A stretch of 64,000 bases of DNA, taken from positions 57,823 to 121,822 of the forward strand of contig NIVC01002648.1 in the NCBI GenBank assembly GCA_002269645.1, written 5' to 3'. The notes beneath the pieces are model-generated. The model searched no databases, was not told the origin of the DNA, and saw only the letters and a program-made list of their open reading frames with translations. The stretch is from Macrostomum lignano. Taxonomy: Eukaryota. The first letter of the stretch is position 1. Every line of letters starts with the position of its first letter. The translations under genes were made by a program, and so were the position numbers. Below, one piece after another: positions 14,620 to 54,930 of the stretch.

Positions 14620-17600
14620 TCACAAAACCGACACCCCCGTAGTGTTGGGAAACAGGCAGGCCAGCAAGCTGCCCAGAGTCATCAGGCCGGCCGCTGAGAT
14701 CAAAGGCCCGGCGCAGCCGGCGTCAATTAGAGCGCCAAACATCAGGTTGCTAAGCAACGAAGCCACGCGAGACAGAGCGCCGGAGACGCCTAGCGCGGTA
14801 GATCGTAGTCCAGTTGGCAGCAGCTCAGTTGAGACAACTCCCAGAGCATTCCAACCGCTGGCTGACAGGCCGGCAAAGGCGCAGGACAGAGCCAGGGCCT
14901 GCCACTGAACCCGGACTGTGGCTACTAGGAATACGCTGACCGCAGTGAGCAGCATGCTGGCTGACAGGATGGTCCGCCTGCCCAGCCGGTCCATCAGTAC
15001 AATCTAAATGGGAAATAACAATAAATCTCAAGGCTTTTTTAGCTACTGCAAGTAGCATAATGAGAGAATTACAGGAAGAAAGTATTTGGTGTTGGAATAG
15101 TTATAATAGCACTTAATACAAAAGCTGTGGGAAATGACAAGGTATGGGAATTGACAAGGTGTGGGAATTTAACAAGGTGTGGGAATTTAACAAGGTGTGG
15201 GAATTGACAAGGTGTGGGAATTGACAAGGTGTGGGAATTGACAAGGTGTGGGAATTGACAAGGTGTGGGAATTAACAAGGTGTGGGAATTGACAAGGTGT
15301 GGGAATTGACAAGGTGTGGGAATTGACAAGGTGTGGGAATTGACAAGGTGTGGGAATTGACAAGGTGTGGGAATTTAACAAGGTGTGGGAATTGACAAGG
15401 TGTGGGAATTGACAAGGTGTGGGAATTGACAAGGTGTGGGAATTGACAAGGGGTGGGAATTTAACAAGGTGTGGGAATTTAACAAGGTGTGGGAATTGAC
15501 AAGATGTGGGAATTGACAAGGTGTGGGAATTTAACAAGGTGTGGGAATTAACAAGGTATGGGAATTGACAAGGTGTGGGAATTTAACAAGGTGTGGGAAT
15601 TAACAAGGGGTGTGGGAATTGACAAGGTATGGGAATTGACAAGGTGTGGGAATTGACAAGGTGTGGGAATTGACAAGGTGTGGGAATTGACAAGGGGTGT
15701 GGGAATTGACAAGGTATTTGAATTGACAAGGTGTGGGAATTGACAAGGTGTGGGAATTTAACAAGGTGTGGGAATTTAACAAGGTGTGGGAATTGACAAG
15801 GGGTGTGGGAATTGACAAGGTGTTTGAATTGACAAGGTGTGGGAATTGACAAGGTGTGGGAATTGACAAGGTGTGGGAATTGACAAGGTGTGGGAATTGA
15901 CAAGGTGTGGGAATTTAACAAGGTGTGGGAATTGACAAGGTGTGGGAATTGACAAGGTGTGGGAATTGACAAGGGGTGGGAATTTAACAAGGTGTGGGAA
16001 TTGACAAGGTGTGGGAATTGACAAGGTGTGGGAATTGACAAGGTGTGGGAATTTAACAAGGTGTGGGAATTAACAAGGTATGGGAATTGACAAGGTGTGG
16101 GAATTTAACAAGGTGTGGGAATTAACAAGGGGTGTGGGAATTGACAAGGTATGGGAATTGACAAGGTGTGGGAATTGACAAGGTGTGGGAATTGACAAGG
16201 TGTGGGAATTGACAAGGGGTGTGGGAATTGACAAGGGGTGTGGGAATTGACAAGGTGTTTGAATTTAACAAGGTGTGGGAATTGACAAGGTGTGGGAATT
16301 GACAAGGTGTGGGAATTGACAAGGTGTGGGAATTAACAAGGTGTGGGAATTTAACAAGGTGTGGGAATTTAACAAGGTGTGGGAATTTAACAAGGTGTGG
16401 GAATTTAACAAGGTGTGGGAATTTAACAAGGTGTGGGAATTGACAAGGTGTGGGAATTAACAAGGTGTGGGAATTGACAAGGGGTGTGGGAATTGACAAG
16501 GGGTGGGAATTTAACAAGGTGTGGGAATTTAACAAGGTGTGGGAATTGACAAGGGGTGTGGGAATTGACAAGGTATGGGAATTGACAAGGTGTGGGAATT
16601 GACAAGGTGTGGGAATTGACAAGGTGTGGGAATTGACAAGGTGTGGGAATTGACAAGGTGTGGGACAAGGTGTGGGAATTGACAAGGTGTGGGAATTGAC
16701 AAGGTGTGGGAATTTAACAAGGTGTGGGAATTGACAAGGTGTGGGAATTGACAAGGTGTGAGAATTGACAAGGTGTGGGAATTTAACAAGGTGTGGGAAT
16801 TAACAAGGTATGGGAATTGACAAGGTGTGGGAATTTAACAAGGTGTGGGAATTAACAAGGGGTGTGGGAATTGACAAGGTATGGGAATTGACAAGGTGTG
16901 GGAATTGACAAGGTGTGGGAATTGACAAGGTGTGGGAATTGACAAGGGGTGTGGGAATTGACAAGGGGTGTGGGAATTGACAAGGGGTGTGGGAATTGAC
17001 AAGGTGTTTGAATTTAACAAGGTGTGGGAATTGACAAGGTGTGGGAATTGACAAGGTGTGGGAATTGACAAGGTGTGGGAATTAACAAGGTGTGGGAATT
17101 TAACAAGGTGTGGGAATTTAACAAGGTGTGGGAATTTAACAAGGTGTGGGAATTTAACAAGGTGTGGGAATTTAACAAGGTGTGGGAATTGACAAGGTGT
17201 GGGAATTGACAAGGTGTGGGAATTGACAAGGGGTGTGGGAATTGACAAGGGGTGGGAATTTAACAAGGTGTGGGAATTTAACAAGGTGTGGGAATTGACA
17301 AGGGGTGTGGGAATTGACAAGGTATGGGAATTGACAAGGTGTGGGAATTGACAAGGTGTGGGAATTGACAAGGTGTGGGAATTGACAAGGTGTGGGAATT
17401 GACAAGGTGTGGGACAAGGTGTGGGAATTGACAAGGTGTGGGAATTGACAAGGTGTGGGACAAGGTGTGGGAATTGACAAGGTGTGGGAATTGACAAGGT
17501 GTGGGAATTTAACAAGGTGTGGGAATTGACAAGGTGTGGGAATTGACAAGGTGTGGGAATTGACAAGGTGTGGGAATTGACAAGGGGTGGGAATTTAACA

Positions 17601-20600
17601 AGGTGTGGGAATTTAACAAGGTGTGGGAATTGACAAGGTGTGGGAATTGACAAGGTGTGGGAATTTAACAAGGTGTGGGAATTAACAAGGTGTGGGAATT
17701 GACAAGGTGTGGGAATTTAACAAGGTGTGGGAATTAACAAGGGGTGTGGGAATTGACAAGGTATGGGAATTGACAAGGTGTGGGAATTGACAAGGTGTGG
17801 GAATTGACAAGGTGTGGGAATTGACAAGGGGTGTGGGAATTGACAAGGTGTTTGAATTGACAAGGTGTGGGAATTGACAAGGTGTGGGAATTGACAAGGT
17901 GTGGGAATTGACAAGGTGTGGGAATTGACAAGGTGTGGGAATTGACAAGGTGTGGGAATTGACAAGGTGTGGGAATTGACAAGGTGTGGGAATTAACAAG
18001 GTGTGGGAATTTAACAAGGTGTGGGAATTTAACAAGGTGTGGGAATTTAACAAGGTGTGGGAATTGACAAGGTGTGGGAATTGACAAGGTGTGGGAATTG
18101 ACAAGGGGTGTGGGAATTGACAAGGGGTGGGAATTTAACAAGGTGTGGGAATTTAACAAGGTGTGGGAATTGACAAGGGGTGTGGGAATTGACAAGGTGT
18201 GGGAATTGACAAGGTGTGGGAATTGACAAGGTGTGGGAATTGACAAGGTGTGGGAATTGACAAGGTGTGGGAATTGACAAGGCACAAAACATGCCATAAG
18301 ATTAGGCTCAAACCAAAAACTAGGACAATAACAATACATTTCGCTAGAAGGCACTCACAGACAGCAGATTTCCAGGCAGGTTGCTGGCATTCACCAAGAA
18401 GCTCTCCATGTAGGGCCGGCTGGCGGACAGCACCTGGGGACTGCAGGCGTTGCTATCGCTGTCGTTAAAAGCTGAGCTGCCGTTGATCCCGGAGCCCAGA
18501 CTGCAAGCGGAGCCGCCATAGGCTTCTACTCGTTTGAACAGTTCGGGAAACCACAGCAGCAAGCCATAGTAACCAAATGCAAGGCTGAATTGAACTCCAA
18601 TGAGCAGCAGCACTGGGCGGCGGTGACGGCGGGAGAACAGGTCCAGCAGGCTGCGCAGCATCTGGGCGCAGCGCCCCATGCGACTGCGCGGCGGGCGCGA
18701 CACCGAACTGCGCATGAACACCCGGCTGAAGGCCTGCGGGGTGTTCAGTGTGGGCTTTCTGTAATGGGATGTCTAGTAAGGGATTTCCGGAGTGGGATTT
18801 CTACTAGGGGTTTCCAGTGTGGGATTTTCCAGTGTGGGAATTCCCAGTGTGGGATTTCCCAGCTAGTGTGGGATTATCGAGTGTGGGATTTTCCAGTGTG
18901 GGATTTTCCAGTGTGGGATTTTCCAGTGTGGGATTTTCCAGTGTGGGATTTCCCAGTCACGGGATTTTCCAGTGTGGGATTTTCCAGTGTGGGGTTTTCC
19001 AGTGTGGGATTTTTCAGTGTGGGATTTTCCAGTATGGGATATTCCAGTGTGGGATTTCCCAGTGTGGGATTTCCCAGTGTGGGATTTCCCAGTCACGGGA
19101 TTTTCCAGTGTGGGGTTTTCCAGTGTGGGATTTTCCAGTGTGGGATTTTTCAGTGTGGGATTTTCCAGTGTGGGATTTCCCAGTGTGGGATTTTCCAGTG
19201 TGGGGTTTTTCAGTGTGGGATTTTCCAATGTGGGATTTTTCAGTGTGGGATTTTCCAGTGTGGGATATTCCAGTGTGGGATTTCCCAGTGTGGGATTTCC
19301 CAGTGTGGGATTTTCCAGTTTGTGAGATTTTCTAGTGTGGGATATTCCAGTGTGGGATTTTCCAGTGTGGGATTTTCCAGTGTGGGATTGGGAATGTTAG
19401 AGTGGGAATATGGAAAAGCAAATATGGGATCTTGAGCTTCGGTTTCTATCCATGCAATGTCTCTGCAAGAATGAGTGCTTCTGGGGTTTCCAATATGGGA
19501 TTATGTTATGTAGAGACACGATTAGGGAATGAGGAAAGCATTATAATAAATAATAGTCATACCGGAACTTCTTGTATGCCGTTTCCAGCAGCCACTCGGT
19601 TCATGAGGGCGGTGGCTTCGTCAACGCGGCCCATCTGCAAGGGTTAAACTAATTTGTTAGAGGCTGTAGGTGAGCGATTAAGAGCCAAATTTCAGGTAAT
19701 CCTGAACTACCAGAGACAATCCTGAACTATCAGAGACAATCCTGAACTACCAGAGACAATCCTGAACTACCAGAGACAATCCTGAAATACCAGAGACAAT
19801 CCTGAACTACCAGAGACAATCTTGAACTACCAGAGACAATCCTAAACTACCAGAGACAATCTTGAACTACCAGAGGCAATTCTAAACTACCAGAGACAAT
19901 CCTGAACTACCAGAGACAATCCTGAACTACCAGAGGCAATCCTGAACTATCAGAGACAATCCTAAACTACTAGGAACAACCCTGAACTATCGGAAACAAT
20001 CTTGAACTACCAGAGGCAATCCTGAACTATCAAAGACAATCCTGAACTACCAGAGACAATCTTGAACTACCAGAGACAATCTTGAACTACCATAGACAGT
20101 CCTAAACTACCAGAGACAATCCTAAACTACCAGAGACAATCTTGAACTACCAGAGACAATCTTGAACTACCAGAGACAATCCTGAACTACCAGAGACAAT
20201 CCTAAACTACCAGAGACAATCCTGAACTACCAGAGACAATCCTAAACTACCAGAGACAATCCTGAACTACCAGAGACAATCCTGAACACAGAGGCAATCC
20301 TGAACTATCAGAGACAAACCTGAACTATCAGAGACAAACCTGAACTATCAGAGACAATCCTAAACTACCAGAGGCAATCCTGAACTATCAGACACAATTC
20401 TGAACTACCAGAGACAATCCTGAACTATCAGAGGCAATCCTGAACTATCTGAGACAATCCTGAACTACCAGAGACAATCCTGAACTACCAGAGACAATCC
20501 TGAACTACCAGAGACAATTCTGAACTACCAGAGACAATCCTGAACTACCAGAGACAATCCTGAACTATCAGACAATGAGACAATCCTGAACTACCAGAGG

Positions 20601-23600
20601 AAATCCTGAACTATCAAAGACAATCCTGAAGTACCATAGAAAGTCCTAAACTACCAAAGACAATCCTGAAGTACCATGAACCACCCTGAACCATCGGAGA
20701 CATTCCTGAACTACCAGAGACAAATCTGAAGTGCAGCAGACACTGCTAGACTAGCACACAAAGAGACACACAAAGACAATCCTGAACTACCAGAGCACCC
20801 CTCTCACCTGCAGGAGATACTTGGGACTCTCAGGCACGCAGGGAAACAGCGCAGCTGACGTCAGACTTGGCAGGCTGCACAACGCCACAAACAGTCGCCA
20901 GGAATGAAAAGGCACACTCCCGCCAAACAGGTTGAACGGGGTCCAGCCAGGCCGAGGCACAACAAGCCAGGCTCCCGCTGCCGTGATCAGCCCGCCGAGC
21001 ATCCAGCAGCACGACAGAGCGGCCACCGCGGCGCCACGACGCCTCCTAGACTGCCACTCGGAATAGTAGGAGAAAATGACGGGATAAGAGCCGCCAACGC
21101 CCAATCCGGACAAGAACCTCAACGCTAGGAAGGTCCAGAAGTTTGGCGCCAGGCAGGACGCCAGACCGCCTGTGGCGTTCACCGTCAACGACCAGATTAG
21201 CGTCGCTCGACGACCAACAGCGTCGCCTGCGGCACCCCAGAGCAGGCCGCCGACAAGCATGCCAGCAAAGATTACAGCGTTCAATGCGCCTTTGTCGAAG
21301 CTGGTGAGCCCCAGGTCGCACTCGGCAGCTGGCAGGATGAAGGAGACGCAAACGATTTCTACGGCATCGGAGGTGCAGGCCCAGGCGCACAGGGACATCA
21401 CGGCCAGGTGGAGACGGCCGTAGCCAGCTTGGTCCAGAGCGGTCTCGATGTCCACGTCTCCGTCCTTGCCGGCGACCACTGAGGCTGCGTCTGCCGGTTT
21501 GATGGGGGAAGATATGCTGGCTTAGCAACTGACACTCTGGGAGGCTGGCCCAGCAACTGACACTCTGGGAGGCTGGCCCAGCAACTGACACTCTGGGAGG
21601 CTGGCCCAGCAACTGACACTCTGGGAGACTGACCCAGCAACTGAGGATCTGGGATGCTGGCCCAGCAACTGAGGATCTGGGATGCTGGCCCAGCAACTGA
21701 GGACCTGGGAGGCTGGCCCAGCAACTGAGGATCTGGGAGGCTGGCCAAGTAACTGACACTCTGGGAGGCTGGCCCAGCAACTGAGGATCTGGGATGCTGG
21801 CCCAGCAACTGAGGATCTGGGATGCTGGCCCAGCAACTGAGGATCTGGGAGGCTGGCCCAGCAACTGAGGATCTGGGATGCTGGCCAAGTAACTGACACT
21901 CTGGGAGGCTGGCCCAGCAACTGACACTCTGGGAGGCTGGCCCAGTAACTGAGGATTTGGGAGGCTGGCACAGTAACTGACACTCTGGGAGGCTGGCCCA
22001 GCAACTGAGGACCTGGGAGGCTGGCCAAGTAACTGACACTCTGGGAGGCTGGCCCAGCAACTGACACTCTGGGAGGCTGGCCCAGTAACTGAGGATTTGG
22101 GAGGCTGGCCCAGTAATTGACACTCTGGGAGGCTGGCCCAGCAACTGAGGACCTGGGAGGCTGGCCCAGCAACTGAGGACTTGGGAGGCTGGCCCAGTAA
22201 CTGACACTCTGGGAGGCTGGCCCAGTAACTGACACTCTGGGAGGCTGGCCCCCCACGCAATGGTTTAAAATCTTAAATCCTACGAAAAGAAACTGTTAAA
22301 TATCCAAAATCCTACAAAAGCAACGGTTTAAAAATCCCAAATACTACAAAATCAACGGTTTAAAAATCCCAAATTCTACCAAAGCAAGGGTTTAAAAATC
22401 CCAAATCCTACAAAAGCAACGGTTTAAAAATCCCAAATCCTACAAAAGCAACGGTTTAAAAATCCCGAATCCTACAAAAGCAACGGTTTAAAAACCCCAA
22501 ATCCTACAAAAGCAACGGTTTAAAAATCCAAAATCCTACAAAAGCAACGGTTTAAAAATCCCAAATCCTACAAAAGCAACGGTTTAAAAATCCCAAATTC
22601 TACAAAAGCAACGGTTTAAAAATCCCAAATTCTACAAAAGCAACGGTTTAAAAATCCCAAGTCCTACAAAAGCAACGGTTTAAAAATCCCAAATTCTACA
22701 AAAGCAACGGTTTAAAAATCCCAAATCCTACAAAAGCAACGGTTTAAAAATCCCGAATCCTACAAAAGCAACGGTTTAAAAATCCCAAGTCCTACAAAAG
22801 CAACGGTTTAAAAATCCCAAGTCCTACAAAAGCAACGGTTTAAAAATCCCAAATTCTACAAAAGCAACGGTTTAAAAATCCCGAATTCTACAAAAGCAAC
22901 GGTTTAAAAATCCCAAATTCTACAAAAGCAACGGTTTAAAAATCCCGAATTCTACAAAAGCAACGGTTTAAAAATCCCAAGTCCTACAAAAGCAACGGTT
23001 TAAAAATCCCAAATTCTACAAAAGCAACGGTTTAAAAATCCCGAATTCTACAAAAGCAACGGTTTAAAAATCCCGAATCCTACAAAAGCAACGGTTTAAA
23101 AATCCCAAGTCCTACAAAAGCAACGGTTTAAAAATCCCAAGTCCTACAAAAGCAACGGTTTAAAAATCCCAAATTCTACAAAAGCAACGGTTTAAAAATC
23201 CCAAGTCCTACAAAAGCAACGGTTTAAAAATCCCAAATCCTACAAAAGCAACGGTTTAAAAATCCCAAGTCCTACAAAAGCAACGGTTTAAAAATCCCAA
23301 ATTCTACAAAAGCAACGGTTTAAAAATCCCAAGTCCTACAAAAGCAACGGTTTAAAAATCCCAAATCCTACAAAAGCAACGGTTTAAAAATCCCAAGTCC
23401 TACAAAAGAAACAGTTTAAAAGTTTAAAACTTCGGACTTTAAATAGAGCAGGCAGTCCGAGTGTCTCACCAACAAAGGAAGTTTCATTGATATCTCTAAA
23501 ATTAAAAATACTCTTTTCCCATTCTTCAGAGAAATGTTCTGTTGGACCTAAATAGAGAAACGCATGTTAGTAGTATGAGGAACATTATAGGTAAAATTAC

Positions 23601-23963
23601 AAGAAATGTTTGAAAGTCTTCGTGTATAGCAACTATAAGTGTTGCTGAATATGCTAAACCGCACCACCTGCAATCTCTAGCTCTGCCTTTCGAGCTCCAA
23701 TTCTTATCGGATAGATAAACAAGCATATGTGGTATGCTTTTAGCATACTGGCGCAAATTCAACGCAATATGCATGTACGTAATACGAGCGTAATATGAAA
23801 GGTTAACAATGCTAAGCAAGCAAAATTCTTTAACGGTAAATGTATTATACTTTTATCTAAGCTAACTCCAAGCTTGAACTTTTCCAATCATTTATTACGT
23901 ACCATCGGATATTAGCGGCCTCTCATCGCTAGGCGCTTCATCGCTATGGTAACTATCAAACAT
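14620..23963 (-). CDS. SV2: SV2-family (synaptic vesicle glycoprotein 2-like) MFS transporter, 6 exons, ~550 aa
   Basis: Exons 23963-23903, 23547-23470, 21490-20808, 19634-19563, 18733-18359, 15003-14620; all GT-AG and phase-consistent, 1653 nt. Motifs DAVEIVCVSFILP, GDAVGRR, WRLFVALCSLPS, PESPKYLL, FGYYGLLLWFPELF, MDRLGRR, STELLPTGLRSTA. Exons 1-2 are less certain than exons 3-6. Symbol is family-level. Confidence 0.88.
15130..18283. repeat. 17-bp minisatellite (ggtgtgggaattgacaa), about 180 copies, in SV2-like intron 5
   Basis: Direct reading, with irregular higher-order blocks. Explains all SIPTPCQFPHLVNSHTL ORFs. Confidence 0.97.
18795..19388. repeat. 15-bp minisatellite (agtgtgggattttcc) in SV2-like intron 4
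   Basis: Direct reading. Confidence 0.95.
19700..20660. repeat. 20-bp minisatellite (cctgaactaccagagacaat) in SV2-like intron 3
   Basis: Direct reading. Confidence 0.95.
21525..22250. repeat. 28-bp minisatellite (agcaactgacactctgggaggctggccc) in SV2-like intron 2
   Basis: Direct reading. Reverse complement of the array at 31030-31250. Confidence 0.95.
22262..23410. repeat. 32-bp minisatellite (cctacaaaagcaacggtttaaaaatcccaaat) in SV2-like intron 2
   Basis: Direct reading, period 32 (tacaaaag at 22441 and 22473). Confidence 0.95.
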
Positions 23964-24117
23964 GCCGGCTGGTTAACATTTACGATTTGGTGACTGCGGG
24001 CACAGAAAGGAGCAATATTTTCCAATAGAAACATGCTAATTCTTCTTGGGGTGTTGCTATTAGTAGTCTATGAGCTATCTTAATGAAATGGAGCTTACTC
24101 AGGGACCACGCCTTAAA

Positions 24118-32708: not shown

Positions 32709-32768
32709 TTACTACTACTACTACGACTACTACTACTGCTACTACTACTACTACTACTACTGCTATTG

Positions 32769-32858
<90 letters not shown>

Positions 32859-32867
32859 ATACTACTG

Positions 32868-34172: not shown

Positions 34173-34244
34173 TAATGCAGTGTCTAATCTCATGTACTTT
34201 TAATTGTCTTATGGATTATCTATAGTCTGATTGGCATTGTTGCT

Positions 34245-44538: not shown

Positions 44539-47500
44539 ATGTCCTCTGAATATGCTTCTGCTTTTTCTATTAGCTGGCTTAGATTGCCTTTGCTATTACC
44601 GTTGCTTGCCTCGCTGCTTCTAACGCCAAGTTTGATTGTATTAATTCAATCGGTTGCACCAACTGCCAGTGTAAATCTGCCAGATCGTCTGCTGTGCGTT
44701 GACAGACGCTGCTCGGAGCCAGTCAGCTCCGCCAGAGTGTTGAACTCGGCTGGCTCTGTTCACGGCGATCTTCGCTCGGTTAGCGCCGGTTCTCGCGTAC
44801 TAATATTAGGCAAAGAGGTTGGCGTTAGTAGGGATAGGCAGACCCTGTGGCTAATTAAATTTAACGACGTAGTCGGCCTATTCGATAAGTCTTATTTTAA
44901 AGAGGTTGGCAAAAGATACGACTCCGATGATCTCATAGAGGTGAACTATCCGCCCAGATCAGTTGGTGTCGACGATCTAGACGATGACGACGACGAGACT
45001 GAGTCGAAGCCAGAGCGACCGCCGCCTGGCCCTGTTGGCAGTCCGGATGTTCCGCCGCTGCAACCGGATACGCAGACTTTACAGGCTCCACCAACTGCTA
45101 TTCAAAATGACGAAACCGAATCTTCACCGGATGCTAACCTTAAAGAGCCTGAAGTTAAACCTGGAGATAAGCCTGAAGCTAAACCTGGAGATAAGCCTGA
45201 AGCAAAACCTGGAGATAAGCCTGAAGATAAGCAGGAAGCTAAACCTGGAGATAAGCCTGAAGCTAAACCTGGAGATAAACCTGGAGATAAGCAGGAAGCT
45301 AAACCTGTAGATAAGCAGGAAGCTAAACCTGAAGATAAGCCTGAAGTTAAACCTGGAGATAAACCTGGAGATAAGCAGGAAGCTAAACCTGAAGAAAAGC
45401 CTGAAGCTAAATCTGAAGATAAGCCTGAAGCTAAACCTGGAGATAAGCAGGAAGCTAAACCTGATGATAAGCCTGAAGCTAAATCTGAAGATAAGCCTGA
45501 AGCTAAACCTGGAGATAAGCCTGAAGCTAAACCTGGAGATAAGCAGGAAGCTAAACCTGGAGATAAGCAGGAAGCTAAACCTGTAGATAAGCAGGAAGCT
45601 AAACCTGTAGATAAGCAGGAAGCTAAACCTGGAGATAAGCCTGAAGCTAAACCTGGAGATAAGCAGGAAGCTAAACCTGTAGATAAGCAGGAAGCTAAAC
45701 CTGGAAGCGATTATGTTTCGAAAGGATTTTTTGACTCAGTGTCCTCTTTCTTTAGCGGAAAGAAAAGTTCGCCTGACGATGCCAATGAAAAGAAGGACAA
45801 AATTGAAGACAAGAAAGATGCCAACAGCTCAGCTGAAAGTGAACACAAAACTAGCGATTCGCCTGGTGATCCATCTGCTAATGCGGGCATTCCAGCATCG
45901 CCTGCAGTTGATGCACAGGGTGATCTCTCTTCTGGTGCTAAAGAGTCGTCTGTCCTTGATGAGAGGAAGGATGCTTCTAATAGTAAGCAAGAATCCAAAG
46001 ACAGGGCAGCTTCTGGTGTCGAAAAAAGCGCATCCGTTGGCTCTCCAGAGGAACAATCACACGGAGTGGATGATCAAAAAGACAGGACACCGTCTAGCAA
46101 AAATTTGCCTAGCAATGAAACGCAACAGTCAGTTGATAAAGCTTCCACCGATGCTGTAGCACAAACGAATACTAGTCAATCAGATACTCAGCGGTCTCAG
46201 CCACCAGAGATTCAAAAGCAGCAGCCTTCCTCAGAGGATGCAAAAACCCAAGAACAACAAACTCCACCAAAAGATGAAAGAAATCTGGGCCAGCAACCTC
46301 CACCAGTAAGAGATGAAAAACAGGCTCAGCAGCCTCCACCAGTGGGAGATGAAGCACAGGCTAAGCAGCCTCCACCAGTGGGAGGTGAAGCACGGGCTAA
46401 GCAGCCTCCACCAGTGGGAGATGAAGCACAGGCTCAGAAACCTCCACCAGTTGATGAAGCACAGGCTCAGCAACCTCCACCAGTGGGAGATAAATCCCAG
46501 TCGGAACAACCTTCACTAGACGCAGATAAGATTCAGGCGCAGCCACTTCCACCAGAAGCACAGGGAACTGAGAAGAAACCTCAACCAGAGCCAGAGAAAA
46601 TGCCGGAGCAACAATCCAAATCAGATTCGGAAAAGACTCAGGCGCAGCAGCTGAGTCCATCAACAGAACCACCAAAGACTCAGGTGGATCATCCGTCTCA
46701 GTCGAAAGAGGGACCATCGGAATCAGGGTCCCAAAACACTTCGGTTGAGCAGTCCCATCCAGAATTGCCGAACACTCAGTCGCAACAGGCTAAGCCTGAT
46801 CAAGACCAAGTCAAACAGCAGGGTAAAGTTGATTCCGAACCCGTGGCTACTCCTGCGCCACCGATTGCTCAACCGACACCCCCGGCTTCATCTCAGCCTT
46901 TGACGCCGCCGCCGCCACCACCGCCTTCGCCGCCACCATCATCCGGCCCTGAGCAGCCACCAGTTTCAATTGAGCCGACGCCAAATCAGGATGTTAAAGA
47001 AGAAAAACCGGCTAAACCGGATGAAGCAGCAAAGCAAATCGACAAGCCGCCACCGCCAGCCTCTGACACGGCTGGACCGCCAACCGCAGGCGCCAAGACT
47101 TCGTCGCCTTCTTCATCATCAACGGCAGCTTCCGACTCTAAGAAATCAGCCGATCAGGGCATCGATCCGGGTCGCTACACTCGAACCGACTCGGGGCCTC
47201 AGCAGCCTCCGCCGCAGCCGCCGAATGCGCAAGAGTCGGAGGGAAATGCATCGTCTGGCGACACTGATGTCGATGATAACAATGTCGAATTAGCGACAAA
47301 GCGTCGCTGCTTAACCTGGCTAACAGGCCGATATCCGGCTGTCCGACTGGCTAAGGCTGGAGTTGACGCAGCCTCGCCAATGGTGCCAGATTGGCTAGTT
47401 CAGTTAGTTGAAACCGTGCCAGTCTCCGCTTGGCTACCAATGAGCGCCAAGAGTCAAGCGCTGGCACTGCTCACTCTGGTAGTGATGCTGGCCGTGTCGT

Positions 47501-48548
47501 TGCTTGCCCGCTGCTGTCTGTGCAGGCGCGACTGGCGCCGGGAATGCCTCGGCGCTCTGGCGCTGACTCGCCGACTAGAAGAACAACTTGGCGAGAAGGA
47601 CGCTTTGAATGGTCGCCTAGCCGAGGATCTGGCCGCGGCCAGGGCGGAGGCTGCCGGCGCTGCCGGTGGCGCGGCCGACTGGCGCGGCAAGATGGAGGCG
47701 GCCAAAGCCGACTGGGAGGCGGAGCGCGCCCGACTACGCAGTCAAATTGTCGAGTCTGAACGACGAATTGGCGAGTTAGAAGCCCGAACTGGTGAACTAG
47801 ACGGCCGGCTGACTGCCGAGATTGATCGAGGAGACAGGGACAGGGAGGAGGCGGCCGCGAAGGTGTTCGAGTTTGAAGAGGTGAAGATTTAAGTCTATGA
47901 TGCTAGATCTGCATGTAGATATGTCAATCGCAAAACACCTACTCTTCTTCTTTCTATCAGTAGCATAATTAGCGTTTTATGCTTTCTTAAGTTAACTCAT
48001 TAAAAATGCAAAAACGCTTCGTATTTAGCTACTATAGCTATAGATGTGTTAGTTAGCTATATTGTGTTGAGAAAGTCAGACTGAATTTAGGGGTACACAC
48101 GAACTTAGCCCAAGTTGGCCTACCGACTGGTATATTTATACTTATATATTCATTTAGCTGCGACAGATCAATATCGGAAAACAGGTGTACATAGCATATG
48201 TACATATCTGCAAACCAACTACACAACAGTATGAAAAGCTGTTTGTCTGGGCTTTTAATGTACGAGTATAAACAGTAGAGATTATTAGAAATTATAGAAA
48301 TTATTAAAATGGAGAATTACGCTACATAAATAATGATCGTACTGAAAGAATAGGAGTTCAGTCAGTCTTAACTCAGTTCGGCGCACTGAGTCAGTCTTAC
48401 TCAGTCTCAAGTAATCTAACAGTTACTTGTAGCATTTCTCATCGTTTCAAGCAGTGTGTACACAATGATCCCCTAGACGATTGTCTGTCTGTCTGTCTGG
48501 CTATCTGTCTGTGTCTGTCTGTCTGTCTGTATGTCTGTCTGTCTGTTA

Positions 48549-48580
<32 letters not shown>

Positions 48581-51500
48581 TTCTTTGTCTGCTCTGTCTC
48601 TTTGTCCGTCCACCTGGGTCGTTCTCAAAACTTCGGTTCAATATAGTATAACAAATCTCAGCAATTTATTAGAATATAGCACTGTCCTGCGACTTTTTAG
48701 GAAATAATTGTTAGCAAAAATAAATAAAAGCAAAGGTTTTATACGGGAAAAATCTAATAAAGAAGCTGTTATCAGCTTCAATATGCCAAATTGAAGTTAT
48801 CGCGCTGTCAAATCATACGTTTTTGTGAATGAAGCCAATCAAGTTTTTGCAAAAAGAGTCAATTTTCTTAGCCACAGCAAAAACTTTTGCAGCGATTGTA
48901 TTTTCAGAAGTAATGCACATCCTAAATATCCGTTTGGTTCCTTTTCACTGCTTAAGTTGGCTAAATAACATTAAAAATTACGAATTTGTAAATTTCCAAA
49001 TTCAGACAGCATGCGATAAACCGGTTGATAAATTAATGGAAACGAATCTTCATTGAAAATATTTTTATTAGTGAAAGCATTAGTTCAAACATTTATGCTT
49101 TCAGCCTTATTTAAAGTATAGTCTAGTGTTTAGAAAGCCTTTCATTAAAAAGTATTTTGATAATTCACAAAAAATATCCACTATCAGAGAGCACAGTTTT
49201 TATTCTATAAGTGCACTATAACTCAGACCTCGAAAATCATTTGAAAACAAAACTTCACACACATAAGGCACCCATCCTGAGGTGGTGCAAAAGTAATAAT
49301 TTTTTTAAATTTGAATAACCATATGGGTATAGTAAGCAATAATGTCAATATTTAGGAATTTTTTCATAAATTTAGTCTATAAGTGGAGTATAACTCAGAC
49401 TTGGACAAACAAATCAAGACAAAACTTCACACACATAAAGCACCCATCATAAGGTGGTGCAAAAGTTATACTGTTTTAAATTGTGAATAAGTATCTGGGT
49501 AATAGTAAGCAATAATGTCAATATTTAAGCATTTTTTCATTAATTTAGTCTATAAGTGCAGTATAACTCAGACTTGGAAAAACAAAACAAGACAAAACTT
49601 CACACACATAAAGCATCCATCCTAAGGTGGTGCAAAAATCCACATTTTCTAAAATTTGAATAATTGTATGGGTATAGTAAGCAATAATGTCAATATTTAA
49701 GCATTTTTGCATAAATTTAGTCTATAAGTGCAGTATAACTCAGACTTGGACAAACAAATCAAGACAAATCTTCACACACATAAAGCACCCATCATAAGGT
49801 GGTGCAAAAGTTATACTGTTTTAAATTGTGAATAAGTATCTGGGTAATAATAAGCAATAATGACAATATTTAGGCTTTTTTTATTAATTTTGTCTATAAG
49901 TGCAGTATAACTCAGGCTTGGAGAACTAAATCAAGACAAAACTTCACACACAAAGAACCCACCCTAAGGTGGTGCAAAAGCTGTAATATTTTGTATTTTT
50001 AAGATGCAATTGTGTATAAGAAGTATAAATAATATCATTATTTAGGGATTTTTTAGATTTTTCAATGTGAAAAAAGTCAGATTGTACAACCCTTTTAATA
50101 ACAGGACTTCTCTCGCATAAAGTAGCTAATCTTGAAGCTTTAAATTCAAAATGATCTGCACGGTTTCTGTTTCCATTTAAGTTTCTATTATGTTGGTGTT
50201 CTTTAATAAACTATCTGTGCACATTATGTAATTTGTTATCTTTTTAAGTAGCCTCTGTAAATATATTGGGACGCTAGATTTCGCGCGACTGGATTTCACG
50301 TGAATGGATTTCGCGTGACTGGATTTCACACGACTGAATTTAAATACATTTACAACAACAAATACTTCCATCTAAACCTTCTAGTCTAACTCGAATCCAG
50401 TCGCGCGAAATCCAGTCCCGCAATTTCTAGCGTCCCAATATATTTTAAACCTCATTCAATGATGATCTCCAGCAGGAAATAGAAGGAAAATAGGAGAGAA
50501 AATCAGGCAACCAGCACTTTCAGATAAGAATATGGGGGATCCCGCACGATTTAAGCTAGAGGCAGCAAGCCTGCGGACCAAATGAGGCCCTCAAAGCCCT
50601 CGTGTTCTTTAAAACTTCACAATAGAAATCCGGCCCGCTCAAGTTTTGTGTCTCTTTTCAGCTCTCTTCTCTCCTCTCTTCTTCTCTCCTCTCCTTTCCT
50701 CTCACTTCTCTCTCCTCTCCTCTCCTCTCTCCCCTTCTCACCCTTCTCTCTTCTCTTTTCGCCTCTCCTCTCGTCTTCTCTCCTCTCCCTTTTCTCTCTT
50801 CTCCTCTCTTCTCCTTTCCTCCTCTCTTTTTTCTTCTTCCTTCTCTTCTCTCTCCTCTCCTAATTCATTTCTCTTCTCTTCACCTCTCTTCTCCTTTATT
50901 CCCTTGCCTCTGCTTTCTCTCAGCATTGCGTGCAACATTGTGTGCAGCATTCTGCTCGTTCAATGGAAGAGAAATGACTTGAAATAATTTTATATACAAT
51001 CGGTGGATGATGATATTGATGTGGAGCAGCTTCTCCCAGATTACAGTCCAGTCCTGCAAGATTTTATATAAACCAGACCTAAGCTCCAAGCTAAGAACGG
51101 AAAACTGTAGATTGAGATTGACTATCTGCAAAATGGATTTATATGGTGCCAGTAATATAAGTTCCCCATTATTCTGACACATGAAAAACTACGATTACTC
51201 CTAATGCACAACTGCAATGCAATTGCCATGTTGTCGCTTCTAAACGTATATATTTCTCATAAAATATGCCACATTATGAATTCACCAACCATGCTGGTAA
51301 TTTTGGGCATTAAATTTAATCTTAGAAGCATTGTGATCATTTTTAAATCAAATTTTGATCATTATTGGTGCTTCTTATTGGTCAGGGGCGTCGGAACCGG
51401 GGGGGGGGGCATGGGGAAGCCCCCTGCACTTTTTAGCATGATCCTGCAGTTGCCCTTTTTGAATTTAAGGCAAGTGTCGGCCGGTATTCGGCTTTGGCTT

Positions 51501-53444
51501 TTCTGAGTCTTGAAAGCTAATAAATGTATCTGAAATACAATTTGAAAATTCTGGTTGGGGTGATTTTTGACACGCGAATTTTTTCAGCTTTCAGCCTTAT
51601 ATTATACAAAATACTTTACAAATACATTACAGTTGGTTTTTAATTGAGTTTCTCATTCAATTTTACCTAATTTAAATCGAAATTGCTACTTACCAAATCG
51701 ATACCTGCAATAAGATATATTTTAAAAAAAGCATAATATATCATATTGAAAAGTCAGTATGAGAGTTGAGGTATAAAAGTGTTTTAATTTTTCCTCAATT
51801 TTCCATATAAATCTGGTTGTAATATCAGTAATAAATATTGATATCCTGAGAAACCTTATATTGCTTAGAAATGAAAATTTATATTTAGATTGCTTGTTTC
51901 AGCTACCAGTAATGATAAGCTATTTATTTAAACGATGTAACCCTTTGGATTCTTTCAGTAAATTCAATTCAGTTAATGGAGTTCCCGTATTGATTTATTA
52001 GTTATGATAATGATTATTATGACAGTTAAGATGTTTTATTTCTACTTTCAAAGAAATAGAAGAAAGAAGAAGAAAGCAAGAAACAAATAAGCAAGCACAA
52101 AGAAAATCTACGGACTAATAGCTTAAATTTTTTATACATCGCGTAGCCGTAGCGTGGTATTGTAGCTGAGCGCAATAAATAATGTCAATTTAATACATTC
52201 TCCGTTTAGGAAGTCAAAATCATTCGGTGTAATCAAAATTTATCATATTAACAAATACGCAGTCCCATTATATCGAAAAAAGACATTAGTTAAATGCTAG
52301 TTTAGTCGTGCTATATCTTTATGTTTTTAAGTAAAAATATTTTCTCTAAATATTATATTTAGCATATAAAAATTAGTCTCGTAATTTTCTGACGGTGCAA
52401 ATAAACAAATCAGCTTCTAATTGTAAAATAAAGTGTTTTCTCTGCTTTTATCCATGTTTTCGCAATATATCATCACTACTCTTGTGTTTAACATCGCTGG
52501 TTAACTGATTCCTTTAGAAAAATATTATTTTCACTACTAGTGTCCCAAGTTTTGAGAACGACCCACCTGTTAGCAGAATTTGAATTTTATTATTTTGAAC
52601 ACATTTAATTATAAACGGGGGTGCCAATATGTGTGACTTTTGGCCATAGACGTATTTAAATTGTCGAATATATAAGACCTACAGACTTATCATAGTTCTG
52701 CAATACACAATACGCACTCGCCCATCCGCGCCTGCAGAAACTGGAAGCAGCCCAGGCCGAACAGCAGCGCCTGTACAACCAGGCCTCCGAGTACTACAAT
52801 AGGATGACCGAGATGCAGTCCGAGCTGGACAGGGCCAATCAGGAAGCCGAGCAGTGTCGGGCTGAGAATGCTACGCTGAGACAGTCGCTTGACAATCTGC
52901 TGGCTAAGCTGGGCTCCGACGATGCGGCAGCGGCAGCGAACGACAACGACGACGATGAGGAGGGTGCCGATGAAGGCGACGGAGAAGGCCAATCAGAAGA
53001 TGAGGAGGATGATGATGAGGATCAACGCGACGCGCCCGACGGTGGCGAGAACGGCGCCGGGGACGACGACGATGCCGCCGACAGCGACAGTGCGTCGACA
53101 CGATGTCGGCGTCGACGTCGGCTGCAGAAACGGCGTCAGAGACGACAAGAAATCCAACTGCAACGTCAGGAGCAGCGCGCCGATTTGATTCGTCGCCTGC
53201 TGGACGCCGAAGCGGCCAGACGCGAGCTGGAGGAGCTGCGGTCGCGTCAGGAGCAGTTTGAGAGTCACGCCAGAGCTGAGGCGGCCAGCCGCTTGGAGTT
53301 GGAGAATGAGCTCAGCGCGGTGCGAGCCGAACAGGCCACCCTAAGAGAGGATCGGGACAAGGCCTGCACCGAACTGAAGGTTTGTTGTAGCAGCAGCAGT
53401 AGTAGTACTAGTAGTAGTAGTGGTGGTAGTAGTTATAGTAGTAT

Positions 53445-53499
<55 letters not shown>

Positions 53500-53624
53500 A
53501 GTAGTTATAGTAGTAGTAGTAGTAGTAGAAGTAGTAGTAGTAGTAGTGGTGGTAGTAGTTATAGTAGTAGTAGTAGTAGTAGTAGTACTAGTAGTAGTAG
53601 TGGTGGTAGTAGTTATAGTAGTAT

Positions 53625-53664
<40 letters not shown>

Positions 53665-53681
53665 AGTAGTTATAGTAGTAT

Positions 53682-53712
<31 letters not shown>

Positions 53713-54930
53713 AGTAGTTATAGTAGTAGTAGTAGTAGTATTACTAGTAGTAGTAGTACTCGTAGTAGTTATAGTAGTAGCAGCAGTAGCAGTAGTAGTA
53801 TTGATAGTAGTAGTATATCATTTCGGGGTCTAGTTTAGACTTTTAACTTGGTCAGCGAGCACCAATTTTGCTATACATCTTTAGGTTATGACTTAGTCAT
53901 AAAGTATAAAGCCTTGAGGACACCTAGTATGGAAAAATGTTTTCTTGACGAATTATATCTCAAGTTTTTAAGCCTGAGAAAAATTGCAACTCTTTAGTAT
54001 GGAACAAAAACAAAATAATAAAGAGACGAAATTGGCAGAATCGGTGCCAGCTGTCGAATTTTAAAGGACTGAACAAAGGTTTCTAAATTTTCATTTAGAA
54101 TTTGAGCTTTGCCTTACTTCTAGCCATGGACAATTGAAACGAGGAACTGTCTAAATAGAAACTTTAAATACTGTTCTGAAGATAGAATGGCAAAATTGCA
54201 GCCCGCTTTCCCGCCTCCCATCCTGCAGGTGCTCCGCGACTACTTCAAAGACCGGGAGTGCGAGTGGCAACGCCGGCTCGGCCAGCAGGAGCTCACGCGC
54301 CAGTCTGACGCCAGCGCCACGGCCAGCGCCCAGCAGCGCCTGGATGAGCAGCGCGCCGAAATTGACCAGCTGCGCGCCCGGCTCGAAGCCACGCAGTCGG
54401 AGCTGGCCGAGGCCGAGCGAGTGCACAGGCGGAGAATCGGCGACCTGGAGAAGCGGGCCCACGACTCCTGGCTGGCAGCCAAAGCTGCCGAGCGTCAGCT
54501 CAGCGAAGTCAAAGACGACAATTCGGCGTTGCGGGCGAAGCTCACCGCCCTGGGCAGTCGGCCGCCGCCGGCGCCAATGTTCAGCATCGGCCGGCCCAGC
54601 TCCCGGTCCTCTGTTGGCTCCGACAGGCGGTCCGCGCAGCAACCGCTGCTGCTGCCGCCACCTCCGCCGCCGATGCTGCAGTCGAACATGCCGCTGCCGC
54701 CTCCGCCGCCGCCGCCGATCTTCCCGATAATGACGTCGCCAGGCAGCGCCGCCGGTTCGGCCATGTCGGCGTCTCCGGCACCGCAGGCGCAATACTCGAT
54801 GCCGCCGTTGCCGCCGCCGCCGCCGCCTCCGCCTCTGTCGATGCCGATGCAGCAGAATGCTTCTTCAATGTCGGCAGCCGGCCCCAGTCAGAGTGTCGGT
54901 CGGCGTCGCACGGGTGGAAATGGTCGATGA
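44539..54930 (+). CDS. MIA3: TANGO1/MIA3 ER-export cargo receptor, 3 exons, ~1560 aa
   Basis: Exons 44539-47880 (alternative donor 47862), 52738-53379, 54229-54930; all phase 0. Signal peptide; MIA SH3-like domain (DRLLCVDRRCSEPVS...LILGKE...LWLIKFNDVVGLFDKSYF); long acidic/Pro lumenal region; TM (LALLTLVVMLAVSLLA); two coiled coils including VLRDYFKDRE; C-terminal PPP-rich domain. Confidence 0.9.
45150..45705 (+). repeat. Coding minisatellite in TANGO1 exon 1 (KPEAKPGD/KQEAKPGD, 12/24-bp units); a second 36-bp repeat (QQPPPVGDEAQA) lies at about 46290-46500
   Basis: Direct reading of the DNA and its translation. Confidence 0.9.
48482..48600. repeat. (GTCT)n microsatellite in TANGO1 intron 1
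   Basis: Direct reading. Confidence 0.95.
49205..49985. repeat. Diverged ~172-bp tandem repeat, about 4.5 copies
   Basis: ctataagtg recurs at about 49206, 49377, 49549, 49721 and 49894. Shared blocks aaaacttcacacacataa, aggtggtgcaaaa, gcaataatgtcaatattta. Confidence 0.85.
50268..50436. mobile_element. 169-bp MITE with TIR GGGACGCTAGA and 8-bp TSD AATATATT
   Basis: aatatatt|gggacgctaga...tctagcgtccc|aatatatt. Subterminal repeats tttcgcgcgactggat on the left and their reverse complement on the right. Superfamily not assigned. Confidence 0.75.
50566..50930 (+). mobile_element. Second, degenerate copy of the hAT-like element at 11262, with a CT low-complexity core
   Basis: aacttcacaatagaaatccggcccgctcaag followed by a CT-rich tract, as at 11316-11346. 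Confidence 0.55.
51383..51500 (+). mobile_element. Probable 5' end of a hAT-type non-autonomous element
   Basis: CAGGGGCGTCGGAACCGGGGGGGGGG...gccccc terminus style. No matching 3' TIR found. Confidence 0.3.
53390..53815. repeat. (AGT)n microsatellite in TANGO1 intron 2
   Basis: Direct reading. Confidence 0.97.

What the first reader, a model, noticed from the sequence alone, without database searches (positions are those of the whole stretch)
14620..54930. Candidate pair of divergent trans-spliced operons from one array-free bidirectional promoter
Seen: AKR then SV2-like run leftward, and FAM114A, SMG7, TANGO1 run rightward, from a 2.8-kb very AT-rich spacer (26963-29740) that has no tandem array. 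Each downstream gene has a 3'-splice-site-like AG shortly before its ATG: 23995-23994 (30 nt), 34224-34225 (19 nt), 44292-44293 and 44517-44518; FAM114A also has one (29739-29740, 34 nt). AATAAA follows each upstream gene (24503-24498 on minus, 33216, 41165). Removing arrays leaves only about 0.5-0.8 kb of unique DNA between cistrons, and the spacers carry arrays just as introns do. Known: flatworms including Macrostomum use spliced-leader trans-splicing, which can resolve polycistronic RNA. Inference: two operons whose intercistronic outrons have been inflated by minisatellites.
Basis: partly seen in the sequence, partly recalled or inferred. Interest (0 to 1): 0.75.

Follow-up and report, generated by a model that had tools for sequence, protein, structure and literature searches.

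The report
Compact five-gene cluster; operons unproven
Five ordinary animal genes lie in two back-to-back runs with very little unique DNA between neighbours, which fits the published distance rule for flatworm operons, but DNA alone cannot show that they are operons, and the idea of repeat-swollen operon spacers is already published.

Summary
I rebuilt all five genes as intact spliced reading frames: AKR and an SV2/SVOP-like transporter run leftward, and FAM114A, SMG7 and a TANGO1-like gene run rightward from a 2.8-kb AT-rich, array-free spacer.

After arrays are removed, stop-to-ATG spacing is 671, 774 and 732 nt, and AATAAA-to-acceptor spacing is 168, 418 and 341 nt. All are under the 1-kb repeat-adjusted limit that Ustyantsev & Berezikov (2021) used to call Macrostomum lignano operons.

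The signals themselves are weak:
- AATAAA occurs at background frequency.
- The acceptor-like AG beats chance only for SV2-like (p≈0.03) and TANGO1 44518 (p≈0.03).
- The SMG7 site is at chance (p≈0.66).
- TANGO1's 44518 acceptor probably closes a local 5'UTR intron, with donors at 44322 and 44383.

Nothing supports "one bidirectional promoter". The source organism could not be verified: the best protein hits are about 60% identical, and none is from a flatworm. No RNA data were reachable, so spliced-leader addition and polycistronic transcription remain untested.

Verdict: a plausible, unproven new member of a known kind, of low-to-moderate interest. One new observation is that all three spacer arrays carry a sense-strand acceptor-like site in nearly every unit.

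The parts
14620..23963 (-). SV2/SVOP-like MFS transporter gene. It has 4 coding exons (23963-23903, 21490-20808, 18733-18359, 15003-14620), giving 500 aa. The introns are filled with five minisatellite arrays.
   Evidence: The spliced model gives one intact ORF. Pfam MFS_1 1.3e-31 and Sugar_tr 6.3e-29.
23994..23995 (-). Candidate trans-splice acceptor of the SV2-like gene (CTCCTTTCTGTGCCCGCAG|TCACC), 30 nt before the ATG.
   Evidence: Read. Its acceptor score equals the median of cis introns, with null p=0.026. No donor scoring 6.1 or more lies between the AKR stop and this site. A spliced-leader ATG would open only a 7-codon upstream ORF.
24123..24432 (-). Array of 35-bp units, 8.9 copies, 100% identical, in the AKR-to-SV2-like spacer. 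Each unit carries CCTCTCTTCAG|TGG on the sense strand.
   Evidence: TRF. Eight sense-strand matches to [T/C]TNCAG and none antisense. 25.8 acceptor-like sites per kb on the sense strand.
24498..24503 (-). AATAAA 441 nt after the AKR stop codon. Two ATTAAA hexamers lie closer, at +66 and +78.
24945..26962 (-). Aldo-keto reductase gene. It has 6 exons (26962-26903, 26654-26370, 26279-26202, 25970-25581, 25175-25093, 24987-24945), giving 312 aa.
   Evidence: Model. Pfam Aldo_ket_red. About 60% identity over 97-99% of its length to animal AKR1B-like proteins.
26963..29774 (.). Divergent intergenic spacer between the AKR and FAM114A start codons. It is AT-rich (GC 0.23-0.36) and free of arrays, tRNA genes and ORFs. 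It is the presumed site of one or two promoters.
29739..29740 (+). Acceptor-like AG (AATGCATGCAG|TTAG) 34 nt before the FAM114A ATG.
   Evidence: Null p=0.16.
29775..32610 (+). FAM114A (DUF719) gene. It has 2 coding exons (29775-30953, 32203-32610), giving 529 aa plus the stop codon. The intron holds 28-bp and 22-bp arrays.
   Evidence: Pfam DUF719 1.3e-35. Splice junction and intact ORF.
33216..33221 (+). AATAAA 605 nt after the FAM114A stop codon, beyond a (TAC)100 microsatellite at 32710-33009. ATTAAA hexamers lie at +83, +494 and +501.
33613..34172 (+). Array of 35-bp units, 16.6 copies, in the FAM114A-to-SMG7 spacer. It is the reverse complement of the array in SMG7 intron 3 (37077-37951).
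   Evidence: TRF. Inverted arms up to 242 nt at 96% complementarity. 39 acceptor-like sites per kb on the sense strand.
34224..34225 (+). It is weak. An alternative AG lies at 34179-34180 (TAATGCAG|TG).
   Evidence: Null p=0.66. A spliced-leader ATG would give a 53-codon overlapping upstream ORF at 34225, against a 15-codon non-overlapping one at 34180.
34245..41050 (+). SMG7 gene. It has 5 coding exons (34245-34649, 35101-35364, 36660-36983, about 37999-38841, 40523-41050), giving 787 aa.
   Evidence: Intact ORF. PDB 1ya0 human SMG7, E=1.8e-53. Pfam EST1 and EST1_DNA_bind. The exon-4 acceptor is uncertain.
41165..41170 (+). AATAAA 114 nt after the SMG7 stop codon.
41489..44244 (+). Array of 34-bp units, 81 copies, 98% matches. 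It fills most of the SMG7-to-TANGO1 spacer. Each unit carries CCCTCTCTGATCCCTCAG| on the sense strand.
   Evidence: TRF. 80 sense-strand pyrimidine-tract/YAG sites and none antisense. 25 acceptor-like sites per kb on the sense strand.
44292..44293 (+). Distal TANGO1 acceptor (CACCTTTCAG|CCGACC). It matches [T/C]TNCAG perfectly and is the better candidate site for spliced-leader addition to this gene.
   Evidence: Scores.
44322..44518 (+). Probable 5'UTR intron of TANGO1. The donor is GCT|GTGAGTA at 44322, or CTG|GTGAGAT at 44383. The acceptor is TTGCAG|GC at 44517-44518, 20 nt before the ATG.
   Evidence: Donor scores 5.7 and 8.7. Acceptor null p=0.034. The join spliced-leader ATG + 44294-44321 + 44519 onward reads in frame into the main ATG with no stop.
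44539..54930 (+). TANGO1/MIA3-like gene. It has 3 coding exons (44539-47880, 52738-53379, 54229-54930), giving 1561 aa. The protein has a signal peptide, an MIA-like N-terminal domain, a long repetitive disordered region, a hydrophobic segment, coiled coils and a proline-rich C-terminus.
   Evidence: Intact ORF. Splice sites. Only a weak MIA match, E=0.12, so the name rests mainly on architecture.

Best explanation
This is a compact cluster of five conserved, housekeeping-type genes in a minisatellite-rich bilaterian genome. The genes form two same-strand runs that diverge from a 2.8-kb AT-rich intergenic region.

The most likely reading is that at least one same-strand junction is a spliced-leader-resolved polycistron of the kind already catalogued in Macrostomum lignano. 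AKR to SV2/SVOP-like is the strongest candidate, and SMG7 to TANGO1-like is second.

Proposed mechanism: RNA polymerase II starts somewhere in the spacer and reads through the first gene. The upstream mRNA is cleaved and polyadenylated. The downstream cistron is released and capped when a spliced leader is added at an acceptor that has no cis donor upstream (23994 for SV2-like, 44293 for TANGO1). TANGO1 then removes a short 5'UTR intron (44322 or 44383 to 44518).

The short ancestral intercistronic regions, about 170-420 nt, were later enlarged by young tandem arrays.

Shown here: gene models, spacing, splice-site quality and absence of upstream donors.
Inferred: transcription through the spacers, spliced-leader addition, promoter location, and that the organism trans-splices at all.

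The spacer is best described as a shared divergent intergenic region, not as a demonstrated single bidirectional promoter.
For: - The genes are same-strand, uninterrupted neighbours with intact models.
- Repeat-adjusted spacing is 168, 418 and 341 nt from AATAAA to acceptor, and 671, 774 and 732 nt from stop to ATG. The next junction is 3,718 nt. The published M. lignano operon limit is 1 kb after repeat subtraction, and that paper reports that repeats add substantially to operon spacers (PMC8629364).
- The SV2-like acceptor scores like a median cis acceptor (null p=0.026). No comparable cis donor lies in the 949 nt back to the AKR stop codon.
- TANGO1 has a perfect [T/C]TNCAG acceptor at 44293, followed by donor and acceptor signals of a small 5'UTR intron.
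- Across six start codons in the window, acceptor-like sites lie just upstream more often than chance (Fisher p=0.014).
- Conserved genes are the class most often trans-spliced in M. lignano: 45% of conserved genes, and 15% of all genes lie in operons (PMC8629364).
- The arrays in the spacers are young (100% and 98% unit identity), which fits recent inflation of short spacers.
Against: - No RNA evidence of any kind could be reached.
- The organism is unverified. The M. lignano spliced leader is absent from the window, as would be expected anyway. An SMG7 query found no relative in 5.8 billion protein clusters, although the eukaryote-containing collection should hold any annotated close relative. 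The AKR's best hits are only about 60% identical, and none is a flatworm.
- The SMG7 acceptor is at chance level and is awkward if the spliced leader's ATG is read.
- The adjusted spacings of 168-418 nt exceed the roughly 100-nt mode of M. lignano operons. That leaves room for compact promoters.
- Closer ATTAAA hexamers make the 3' ends uncertain.
- Each spacer array offers 8-80 competing acceptor-like sites upstream of the proposed one.
- A read-through precursor would contain inverted arrays that are 96% complementary.
Confidence: 0.4

Rival explanations
1. Each gene is its own transcription unit. Compact promoters lie in the short unique DNA, or at the array edges, upstream of SV2-like, SMG7 and TANGO1. 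Some or all of the genes are still spliced-leader trans-spliced, but on their own short outrons. The close spacing only reflects a gene-dense neighbourhood.
For: - In M. lignano about 60% of trans-spliced genes are not in operons (PMC8629364).
- The adjusted spacings of 168-418 nt are larger than the roughly 100-nt operon mode.
- 127 nt, 53 nt and 49 nt of unique DNA lie between the array ends and the acceptors, plus 370 nt and 300 nt before the arrays.
- In C. elegans, TSSs cannot be inferred from spliced-leader sites and sequence alone (PMC3730108).
Against: - For SV2-like, only about 170 nt of non-array DNA separates the AKR AATAAA from the acceptor, which is very little for a promoter plus an outron.
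- No TATA-like element was seen when reading these segments. The core promoter grammar of this organism is unknown, so this is weak evidence.
Confidence: 0.3
2. There is no spliced-leader trans-splicing at this locus, or in this organism at all. These are conventional capped, monocistronic genes. The AGs before the ATGs are either chance (SMG7, AKR, FAM114A) or cis acceptors of 5'UTR introns whose first exons lie upstream (TANGO1, possibly SV2-like and cadherin).
For: - The organism is unverified.
- Three of the five proposed or possible acceptors are at chance level.
- The TANGO1 acceptor at 44518 has proper cis donors 136-197 nt upstream.
- AATAAA after each gene is expected of any gene, and by chance.
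Against: - No donor of cis quality was found upstream of the SV2-like acceptor, right back to the AKR stop codon.
- Good acceptors within 20-35 nt of start codons are enriched overall (p=0.014).
- Spacings are very short for three independent promoters plus 5'UTR first exons.
Confidence: 0.25

Closest known systems
Macrostomum lignano spliced-leader trans-spliced operons, with intergenic distances enlarged by repeats (Ustyantsev & Berezikov 2021, PMC8629364; transcriptional units of Wudarski et al. 2017, PMC5730564)
   Same: - Same-strand neighbours with repeat-adjusted spacing under 1 kb.
- Tandem repeats fill the spacers.
- Conserved genes.
- Run sizes of two and three genes, the commonest operon sizes there (75% and 18%).
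- An acceptor just upstream of the ATG.
   Different: - Here there is no evidence from spliced-leader reads, poly(A)-site (T-fill) reads or precursor RNA.
- The organism is not verified.
- The adjusted spacings (168-418 nt) lie above the roughly 100-nt mode.
- Only TANGO1 matches the [T/C]TNCAG motif exactly.
C. elegans operons, and bidirectional promoters of trans-spliced genes (PMC3730108)
   Same: - Downstream cistrons would be resolved by spliced-leader addition.
- First genes can themselves be trans-spliced, so their TSSs are hidden in an outron.
- Divergent gene pairs can share a promoter region.
   Different: - C. elegans uses a dedicated SL2 and spacers of about 100 nt without arrays.
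- Its candidate bidirectional promoters have TSS pairs 60-160 bp apart. Here the ATGs are 2,812 bp apart and the TSSs are unknown.
Divergent strand-switch regions of kinetoplastids. Two polycistronic units diverge from one initiation region (established knowledge; T. brucei transcription start regions are discussed in PMC9566855, listed).
   Same: Two head-to-head runs of same-strand genes leave one intergenic region. The cistrons are resolved by trans-splicing coupled to polyadenylation.
   Different: Kinetoplastid units hold tens to hundreds of genes, and every gene is trans-spliced. Here the runs hold 2 and 3 genes in an animal genome with ordinary introns, and the shared initiation region is only conjecture.

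Membership tests
M. lignano-type spliced-leader trans-spliced operon (criteria of PMC8629364) | Immediately adjacent genes in the same orientation, with no opposite-strand gene between them | tested here: met
   AKR then SV2-like on the minus strand; FAM114A, SMG7 and TANGO1-like on the plus strand. No other ORF, Pfam hit, tRNA or Rfam hit lies in the spacers.
M. lignano-type spliced-leader trans-spliced operon (criteria of PMC8629364) | Intergenic distance under 1 kb after repeats are subtracted | tested here: met
   168, 418 and 341 nt from AATAAA to acceptor. The upper bounds from stop to ATG are 671, 774 and 732 nt. Only tandem arrays were subtracted; the 3' ends are inferred from hexamers.
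M. lignano-type spliced-leader trans-spliced operon (criteria of PMC8629364) | The downstream gene carries the spliced leader (spliced-leader reads at its first exon) | not testable with these tools
   No transcript data could be reached. Protein-collection searches found no close relative of these genes, so no cDNA contigs could be fetched.
M. lignano-type spliced-leader trans-spliced operon (criteria of PMC8629364) | Acceptor motif [T/C]TNCAG at the outron/exon junction (present at about 44% of sites in the paper) | tested here: inconclusive
   TANGO1 44293 (TTTCAG) and 44518 (TTGCAG) match exactly. SV2-like (CCGCAG) and FAM114A (ATGCAG) each have one mismatch. SMG7 is CTATAG, with TAG rather than CAG. 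The motif occurs 2.5 times per kb per strand in the window.
M. lignano-type spliced-leader trans-spliced operon (criteria of PMC8629364) | The source organism uses this spliced leader (that is, it is a Macrostomum) | tested here: inconclusive
   - The 35-nt spliced leader is absent from the window, which is uninformative.
- Rfam finds nothing.
- The AKR's best hits are about 60% identical and come from assorted bilaterians, with no flatworm among the best 120.
- SMG7 has no relative in the collection.
- The array units are not in the literature.
Outron (an acceptor with no upstream cis donor; Conrad et al. 1993 as summarised in PMC8629364) | [quoted passage not shown] | tested here: inconclusive
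   - Met for SV2-like. The acceptor has p=0.026, and the best upstream donor scores 6.0 against a cis median of about 10.
- Met for TANGO1 44293.
- Not met for TANGO1 44518, which has donors at 44322 and 44383.
- The SMG7 acceptor is itself at chance level.
Bidirectional promoter | Two divergent TSSs within a short shared region (60-160 bp in C. elegans, PMC3730108; under about 1 kb by the usual vertebrate convention, from my own knowledge) | tested here: inconclusive
   The TSSs are unknown. The ATGs are 2,812 bp apart, and no shared motif or symmetry was found in the spacer. The feature is neither shown nor excluded.

The most novel reading that the evidence does not exclude
The arrays in the spacers may not be passive filler. 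All three intercistronic arrays carry a pyrimidine-tract/CAG acceptor-like site on the sense strand of nearly every unit (8, about 22 and about 69-80 sites) and none on the antisense strand. Only 3 of the other 53 array-strand combinations in the window do so.

If the spacers are transcribed, these arrays would be tandem 'landing pads' for spliced-leader addition, or decoys. They could cut up the precursor, help 3'-end formation of the upstream gene, or tune how much productive downstream mRNA is made.

In addition, the inverted arrays that flank SMG7 exons 1-3 would form a stem of several hundred base pairs in the precursor. Standard pipelines would miss such events, because reads inside arrays map to many places.
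Probability: 0.1. Interest if true: 0.55.

Novelty: new member of a known kind. Interest (0 to 1): 0.25.

Why it matters
If confirmed, this locus would be one more example, with an unusually clear layout, of animal operons whose intercistronic regions have been enlarged by young minisatellites. It would also show that polymerase and the processing machinery tolerate 0.3-2.8 kb of near-perfect tandem repeat between cistrons. SMG7, a nonsense-mediated-decay factor, and TANGO1, an ER-export factor, would then be co-transcribed.

The general phenomenon is already described genome-wide for M. lignano. Public tracks of spliced-leader, poly(A)-site and TSS reads exist that would settle this locus in minutes. 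The finding is therefore a look-up, not a discovery.

The part worth pursuing is the strand-specific presence of acceptor-like sites in every unit of the spacer arrays.

Tried and rejected
1. Fetching transcripts through the protein collection.
- A chimeric SMG7 + TANGO1 N-terminal query returned nothing, probably because low-complexity words filled the candidate list.
- A clean SMG7 query also returned nothing.
- The full AKR query found only relatives at 61% identity or less.
- Ten raw window ORFs are not in the collection.
- So no cDNA or genome contigs of this organism could be pulled, and the organism stays unidentified.

2. The spliced-leader sequence, Rfam and tRNA scans found nothing in the window.

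3. Supplements of the M. lignano genome and annotation papers hold no gene tables with SMG7, FAM114A, MIA3 or SV2.

4. The array units do not occur in the searchable literature.

5. A fully position-specific acceptor matrix built from 15 sites was too noisy. It scored the visually good AKR site poorly. I replaced it with a pooled pyrimidine-tract model.

6. I considered that the spacer arrays arose by duplication of the genuine acceptor region. I rejected this because the units do not resemble the unique acceptor sequences.

7. I considered hidden genes or RNA genes in the 2.8-kb spacer and found none.

Full report
**What is there.** The window is eukaryotic and extremely rich in minisatellites. 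TRF reports 67 rows, and arrays fill most introns and intergenic DNA. Exons are GC-rich and unique non-coding DNA is AT-rich. I rebuilt all five genes as spliced models, and each gives a single intact reading frame.
- Aldo-keto reductase: 6 exons, 312 aa, minus strand, ATG 26962, stop 24945.
- SV2/SVOP-like MFS transporter: 4 coding exons, 500 aa, minus strand, ATG 23963, stop 14620.
- FAM114A/DUF719: 2 exons.
- SMG7: 5 exons, 787 aa. It matches PDB 1ya0 at E=1.8e-53.
- TANGO1/MIA3-like: 3 coding exons, 1561 aa. The name rests on architecture, because the MIA SH3 match is only E=0.12.

A cadherin gene starts at 60957 on the plus strand.

**Check of the observation.** Every coordinate in the finding is right.
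- The five AG dinucleotides and their distances to the start codons are correct.
- The three AATAAA hexamers are where stated.
- The spacer at 26963-29774 is AT-rich and array-free. It also lacks ORFs above 68 aa, tRNA genes and Rfam hits.
- Unique DNA between coding regions is 671, 774 and 732 nt. From AATAAA to the proposed acceptor it is 168, 418 and 341 nt.

**Is it more than chance?**
- AATAAA is not. It occurs 1.5 times per kb per strand in unique non-coding DNA. SMG7 contains 27 sense copies, mostly in the intron-3 array. The SV2-like stop has no AATAAA or ATTAAA within 1.5 kb downstream, and TANGO1 has only one ATTAAA. Closer ATTAAA hexamers exist after AKR and FAM114A.
- For the acceptors, I built a model from the 15 cis acceptors of this window. 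I then asked how often an equal or better AG lies 5-45 nt upstream of a random unique non-coding position. The results are SV2-like 0.026, TANGO1 (44518) 0.034, cadherin 0.10, FAM114A 0.16, AKR 0.36 and SMG7 0.66, with a combined p of 0.014 (an earlier, noisier version is).
- So start codons in this window tend to sit just behind a splice acceptor. Individually, only two sites stand out, and the SMG7 site does not.

**Refinements.**
- A donor scan found no donor of cis quality between the AKR stop codon and the SV2-like acceptor, nor upstream of the SMG7 ATG. That is the outron configuration.
The acceptor at 44518 therefore most likely closes a local 5'UTR intron, and 44293 (TTTCAG, a perfect [T/C]TNCAG) is the candidate site for spliced-leader addition.
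- The M. lignano spliced leader ends in ATG (PMC8629364), so I checked reading frames. At the SV2-like, FAM114A and TANGO1 44518 sites it would open upstream ORFs of only 6-8 codons. At SMG7 34225 it would open a 53-codon ORF that overlaps the start codon out of frame. The join of spliced leader + 44294-44321 + 44519 onward runs in frame into the TANGO1 ATG.

**What is known.**
- Wudarski et al. 2017 (PMC5730564) mapped spliced-leader reads, poly(A) sites and RAMPAGE TSSs on the M. lignano genome. They found that about 7% of transcriptional units are polycistronic precursors.
- Ustyantsev & Berezikov 2021 (PMC8629364) report that 30% of genes are trans-spliced and 15% lie in operons, mostly of two or three genes. 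They also show that repeats add substantially to operon intergenic distances. After repeat subtraction, the spacing between trans-spliced genes peaks near 100 bp, and 1 kb is their operon threshold.
All three junctions here pass the published distance criterion, whereas TANGO1 to cadherin does not at 3.7 kb.

**What could not be shown.**
- I could not reach any RNA evidence.
- The protein collection contains eukaryotes but no close relative of this organism. The AKR's best hits are about 60% identical and come from annelid, hemichordate, brachiopod and arthropod species. No flatworm is among the best 120 hits. SMG7 found nothing, and raw ORFs are not on record.
- The Macrostomum attribution, and hence the premise that this organism trans-splices, is unverified.
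- Nothing in the sequence speaks for a single bidirectional promoter. The two ATGs are 2.8 kb apart. Candidate bidirectional promoters of trans-spliced C. elegans genes have TSS pairs 60-160 bp apart, and that study stresses that TSSs cannot be inferred from spliced-leader sites and sequence (PMC3730108).

**Most likely mechanism.** I give 0.4 to the reading that at least one junction is a real spliced-leader-resolved polycistron, most probably AKR to SV2-like. I give 0.3 to independent promoters with or without trans-splicing of each gene's own outron. I give 0.25 to no trans-splicing at all, with the acceptors being chance or 5'UTR-intron sites. The high unit identity of the spacer arrays (100% and 98%) suggests recent expansion inside spacers that were once short.

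**A new observation.**
- Using the same acceptor model without exon positions, all three spacer arrays carry about one strong acceptor-like site per unit on the sense strand (25-39 per kb) and none on the antisense strand.
- Among the other 53 array-strand combinations in the window, only three reach 15 per kb, and one of those is the inverted copy of a spacer array.
- The chance that the three spacer arrays all fall in the top six of 56 is about 0.0007.
- Three caveats apply: the threshold was chosen after seeing the data, n=3, and the score is driven largely by C-richness.
- The AKR-to-SV2-like array has 8 exact [T/C]TNCAG matches on the sense strand, and the SMG7-to-TANGO1 array has 80 pyrimidine-tract/YAG sites.
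- The FAM114A-to-SMG7 array is the reverse complement of the array in SMG7 intron 3, with arms up to 242 nt at 96% complementarity. A read-through precursor would therefore carry a long stem that brackets SMG7 exons 1-3.

**Verdict.** The decisive data probably exist in public tracks. Interest is low to moderate.

Noticed in passing
window 24123-24432, 33613-34172, 41489-44244: All three arrays that lie between same-strand genes carry about one pyrimidine-tract/CAG acceptor-like site per unit on the sense strand (25-39 per kb) and none on the antisense strand. Only 3 of the other 53 array-strand combinations do so. The threshold was chosen after the fact, n=3, and C-richness is a confound.
   Followed up: partly
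window 33613-34172 versus 37077-37951: The 35-bp array upstream of SMG7 is the reverse complement of the array in SMG7 intron 3, with arms up to 242 nt at 96% complementarity. If both are transcribed in one precursor, they form a long stem that brackets SMG7 exons 1-3.
   Followed up: partly
window 37077-37951: The array in SMG7 intron 3 puts about 25 AATAAA hexamers on the sense strand inside the gene; there are 27 sense AATAAA between the ATG and the stop. The hexamer alone therefore cannot direct polyadenylation here.
   Followed up: yes
window 44294-44518: A probable 28-nt or 89-nt 5'UTR mini-exon of TANGO1 is followed by a 197-nt or 136-nt intron. With the 28-nt version, an ATG at the 3' end of a spliced leader would read in frame, without a stop, into the annotated start codon, adding 17 residues before the signal peptide.
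   Followed up: partly
window 21516-22251 and 31030-31247: The same 28-bp minisatellite family (GCTGGCCCAGCAACTGA...CTGGGAG) lies in SV2-like intron 1 and in the FAM114A intron. The copies are on opposite DNA strands, so they have the same orientation in the two transcripts. The arrays at 1974-2385 and 38882-40466 share the core CGGCAACCCC. Minisatellite families are dispersed across the window.
   Followed up: no
window 11240-12676 and 50582-50987: Two CT-rich arrays are preceded by similar flanking sequence, which translates as ...SLKLHN(S/R)NPARS.... This suggests a common mobile or duplicated origin.
   Followed up: no
window about 61638-61654: The cadherin gene switches reading frame inside a conserved ...KPLDR|[16 protein letters not shown]... 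motif. The sequence GACCGGAGGAG appears to lack one G. This is either a homopolymer error in the assembly or a real frameshift or pseudogene.
   Followed up: partly
window about 27472-27740: There is a short element with imperfect terminal inverted repeats (GGGGCCTCTTCATATT...CCAGAACCAGA / TCTGGTTCTGGAACC...AATATGAAAAGGCCC) inside the divergent spacer. It looks like a MITE. I saw it by eye, and the gapless repeat tool did not find it.
   Followed up: no
window 45146-45705 and 46258-46555: Two tandem arrays (24/48-bp and 36-bp units) lie inside TANGO1 exon 1 and are translated in frame, as PEAKPGDK-type and QQPPPVGDEA-type repeats. Minisatellite expansion in this genome therefore also reaches coding sequence.
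   Followed up: no
window 60927: The cadherin gene also has an acceptor-like site (GTTGGCAG|GC) 29 nt before its ATG, with null p=0.10. This is part of a general tendency in the window for start codons to follow an acceptor.
   Followed up: partly
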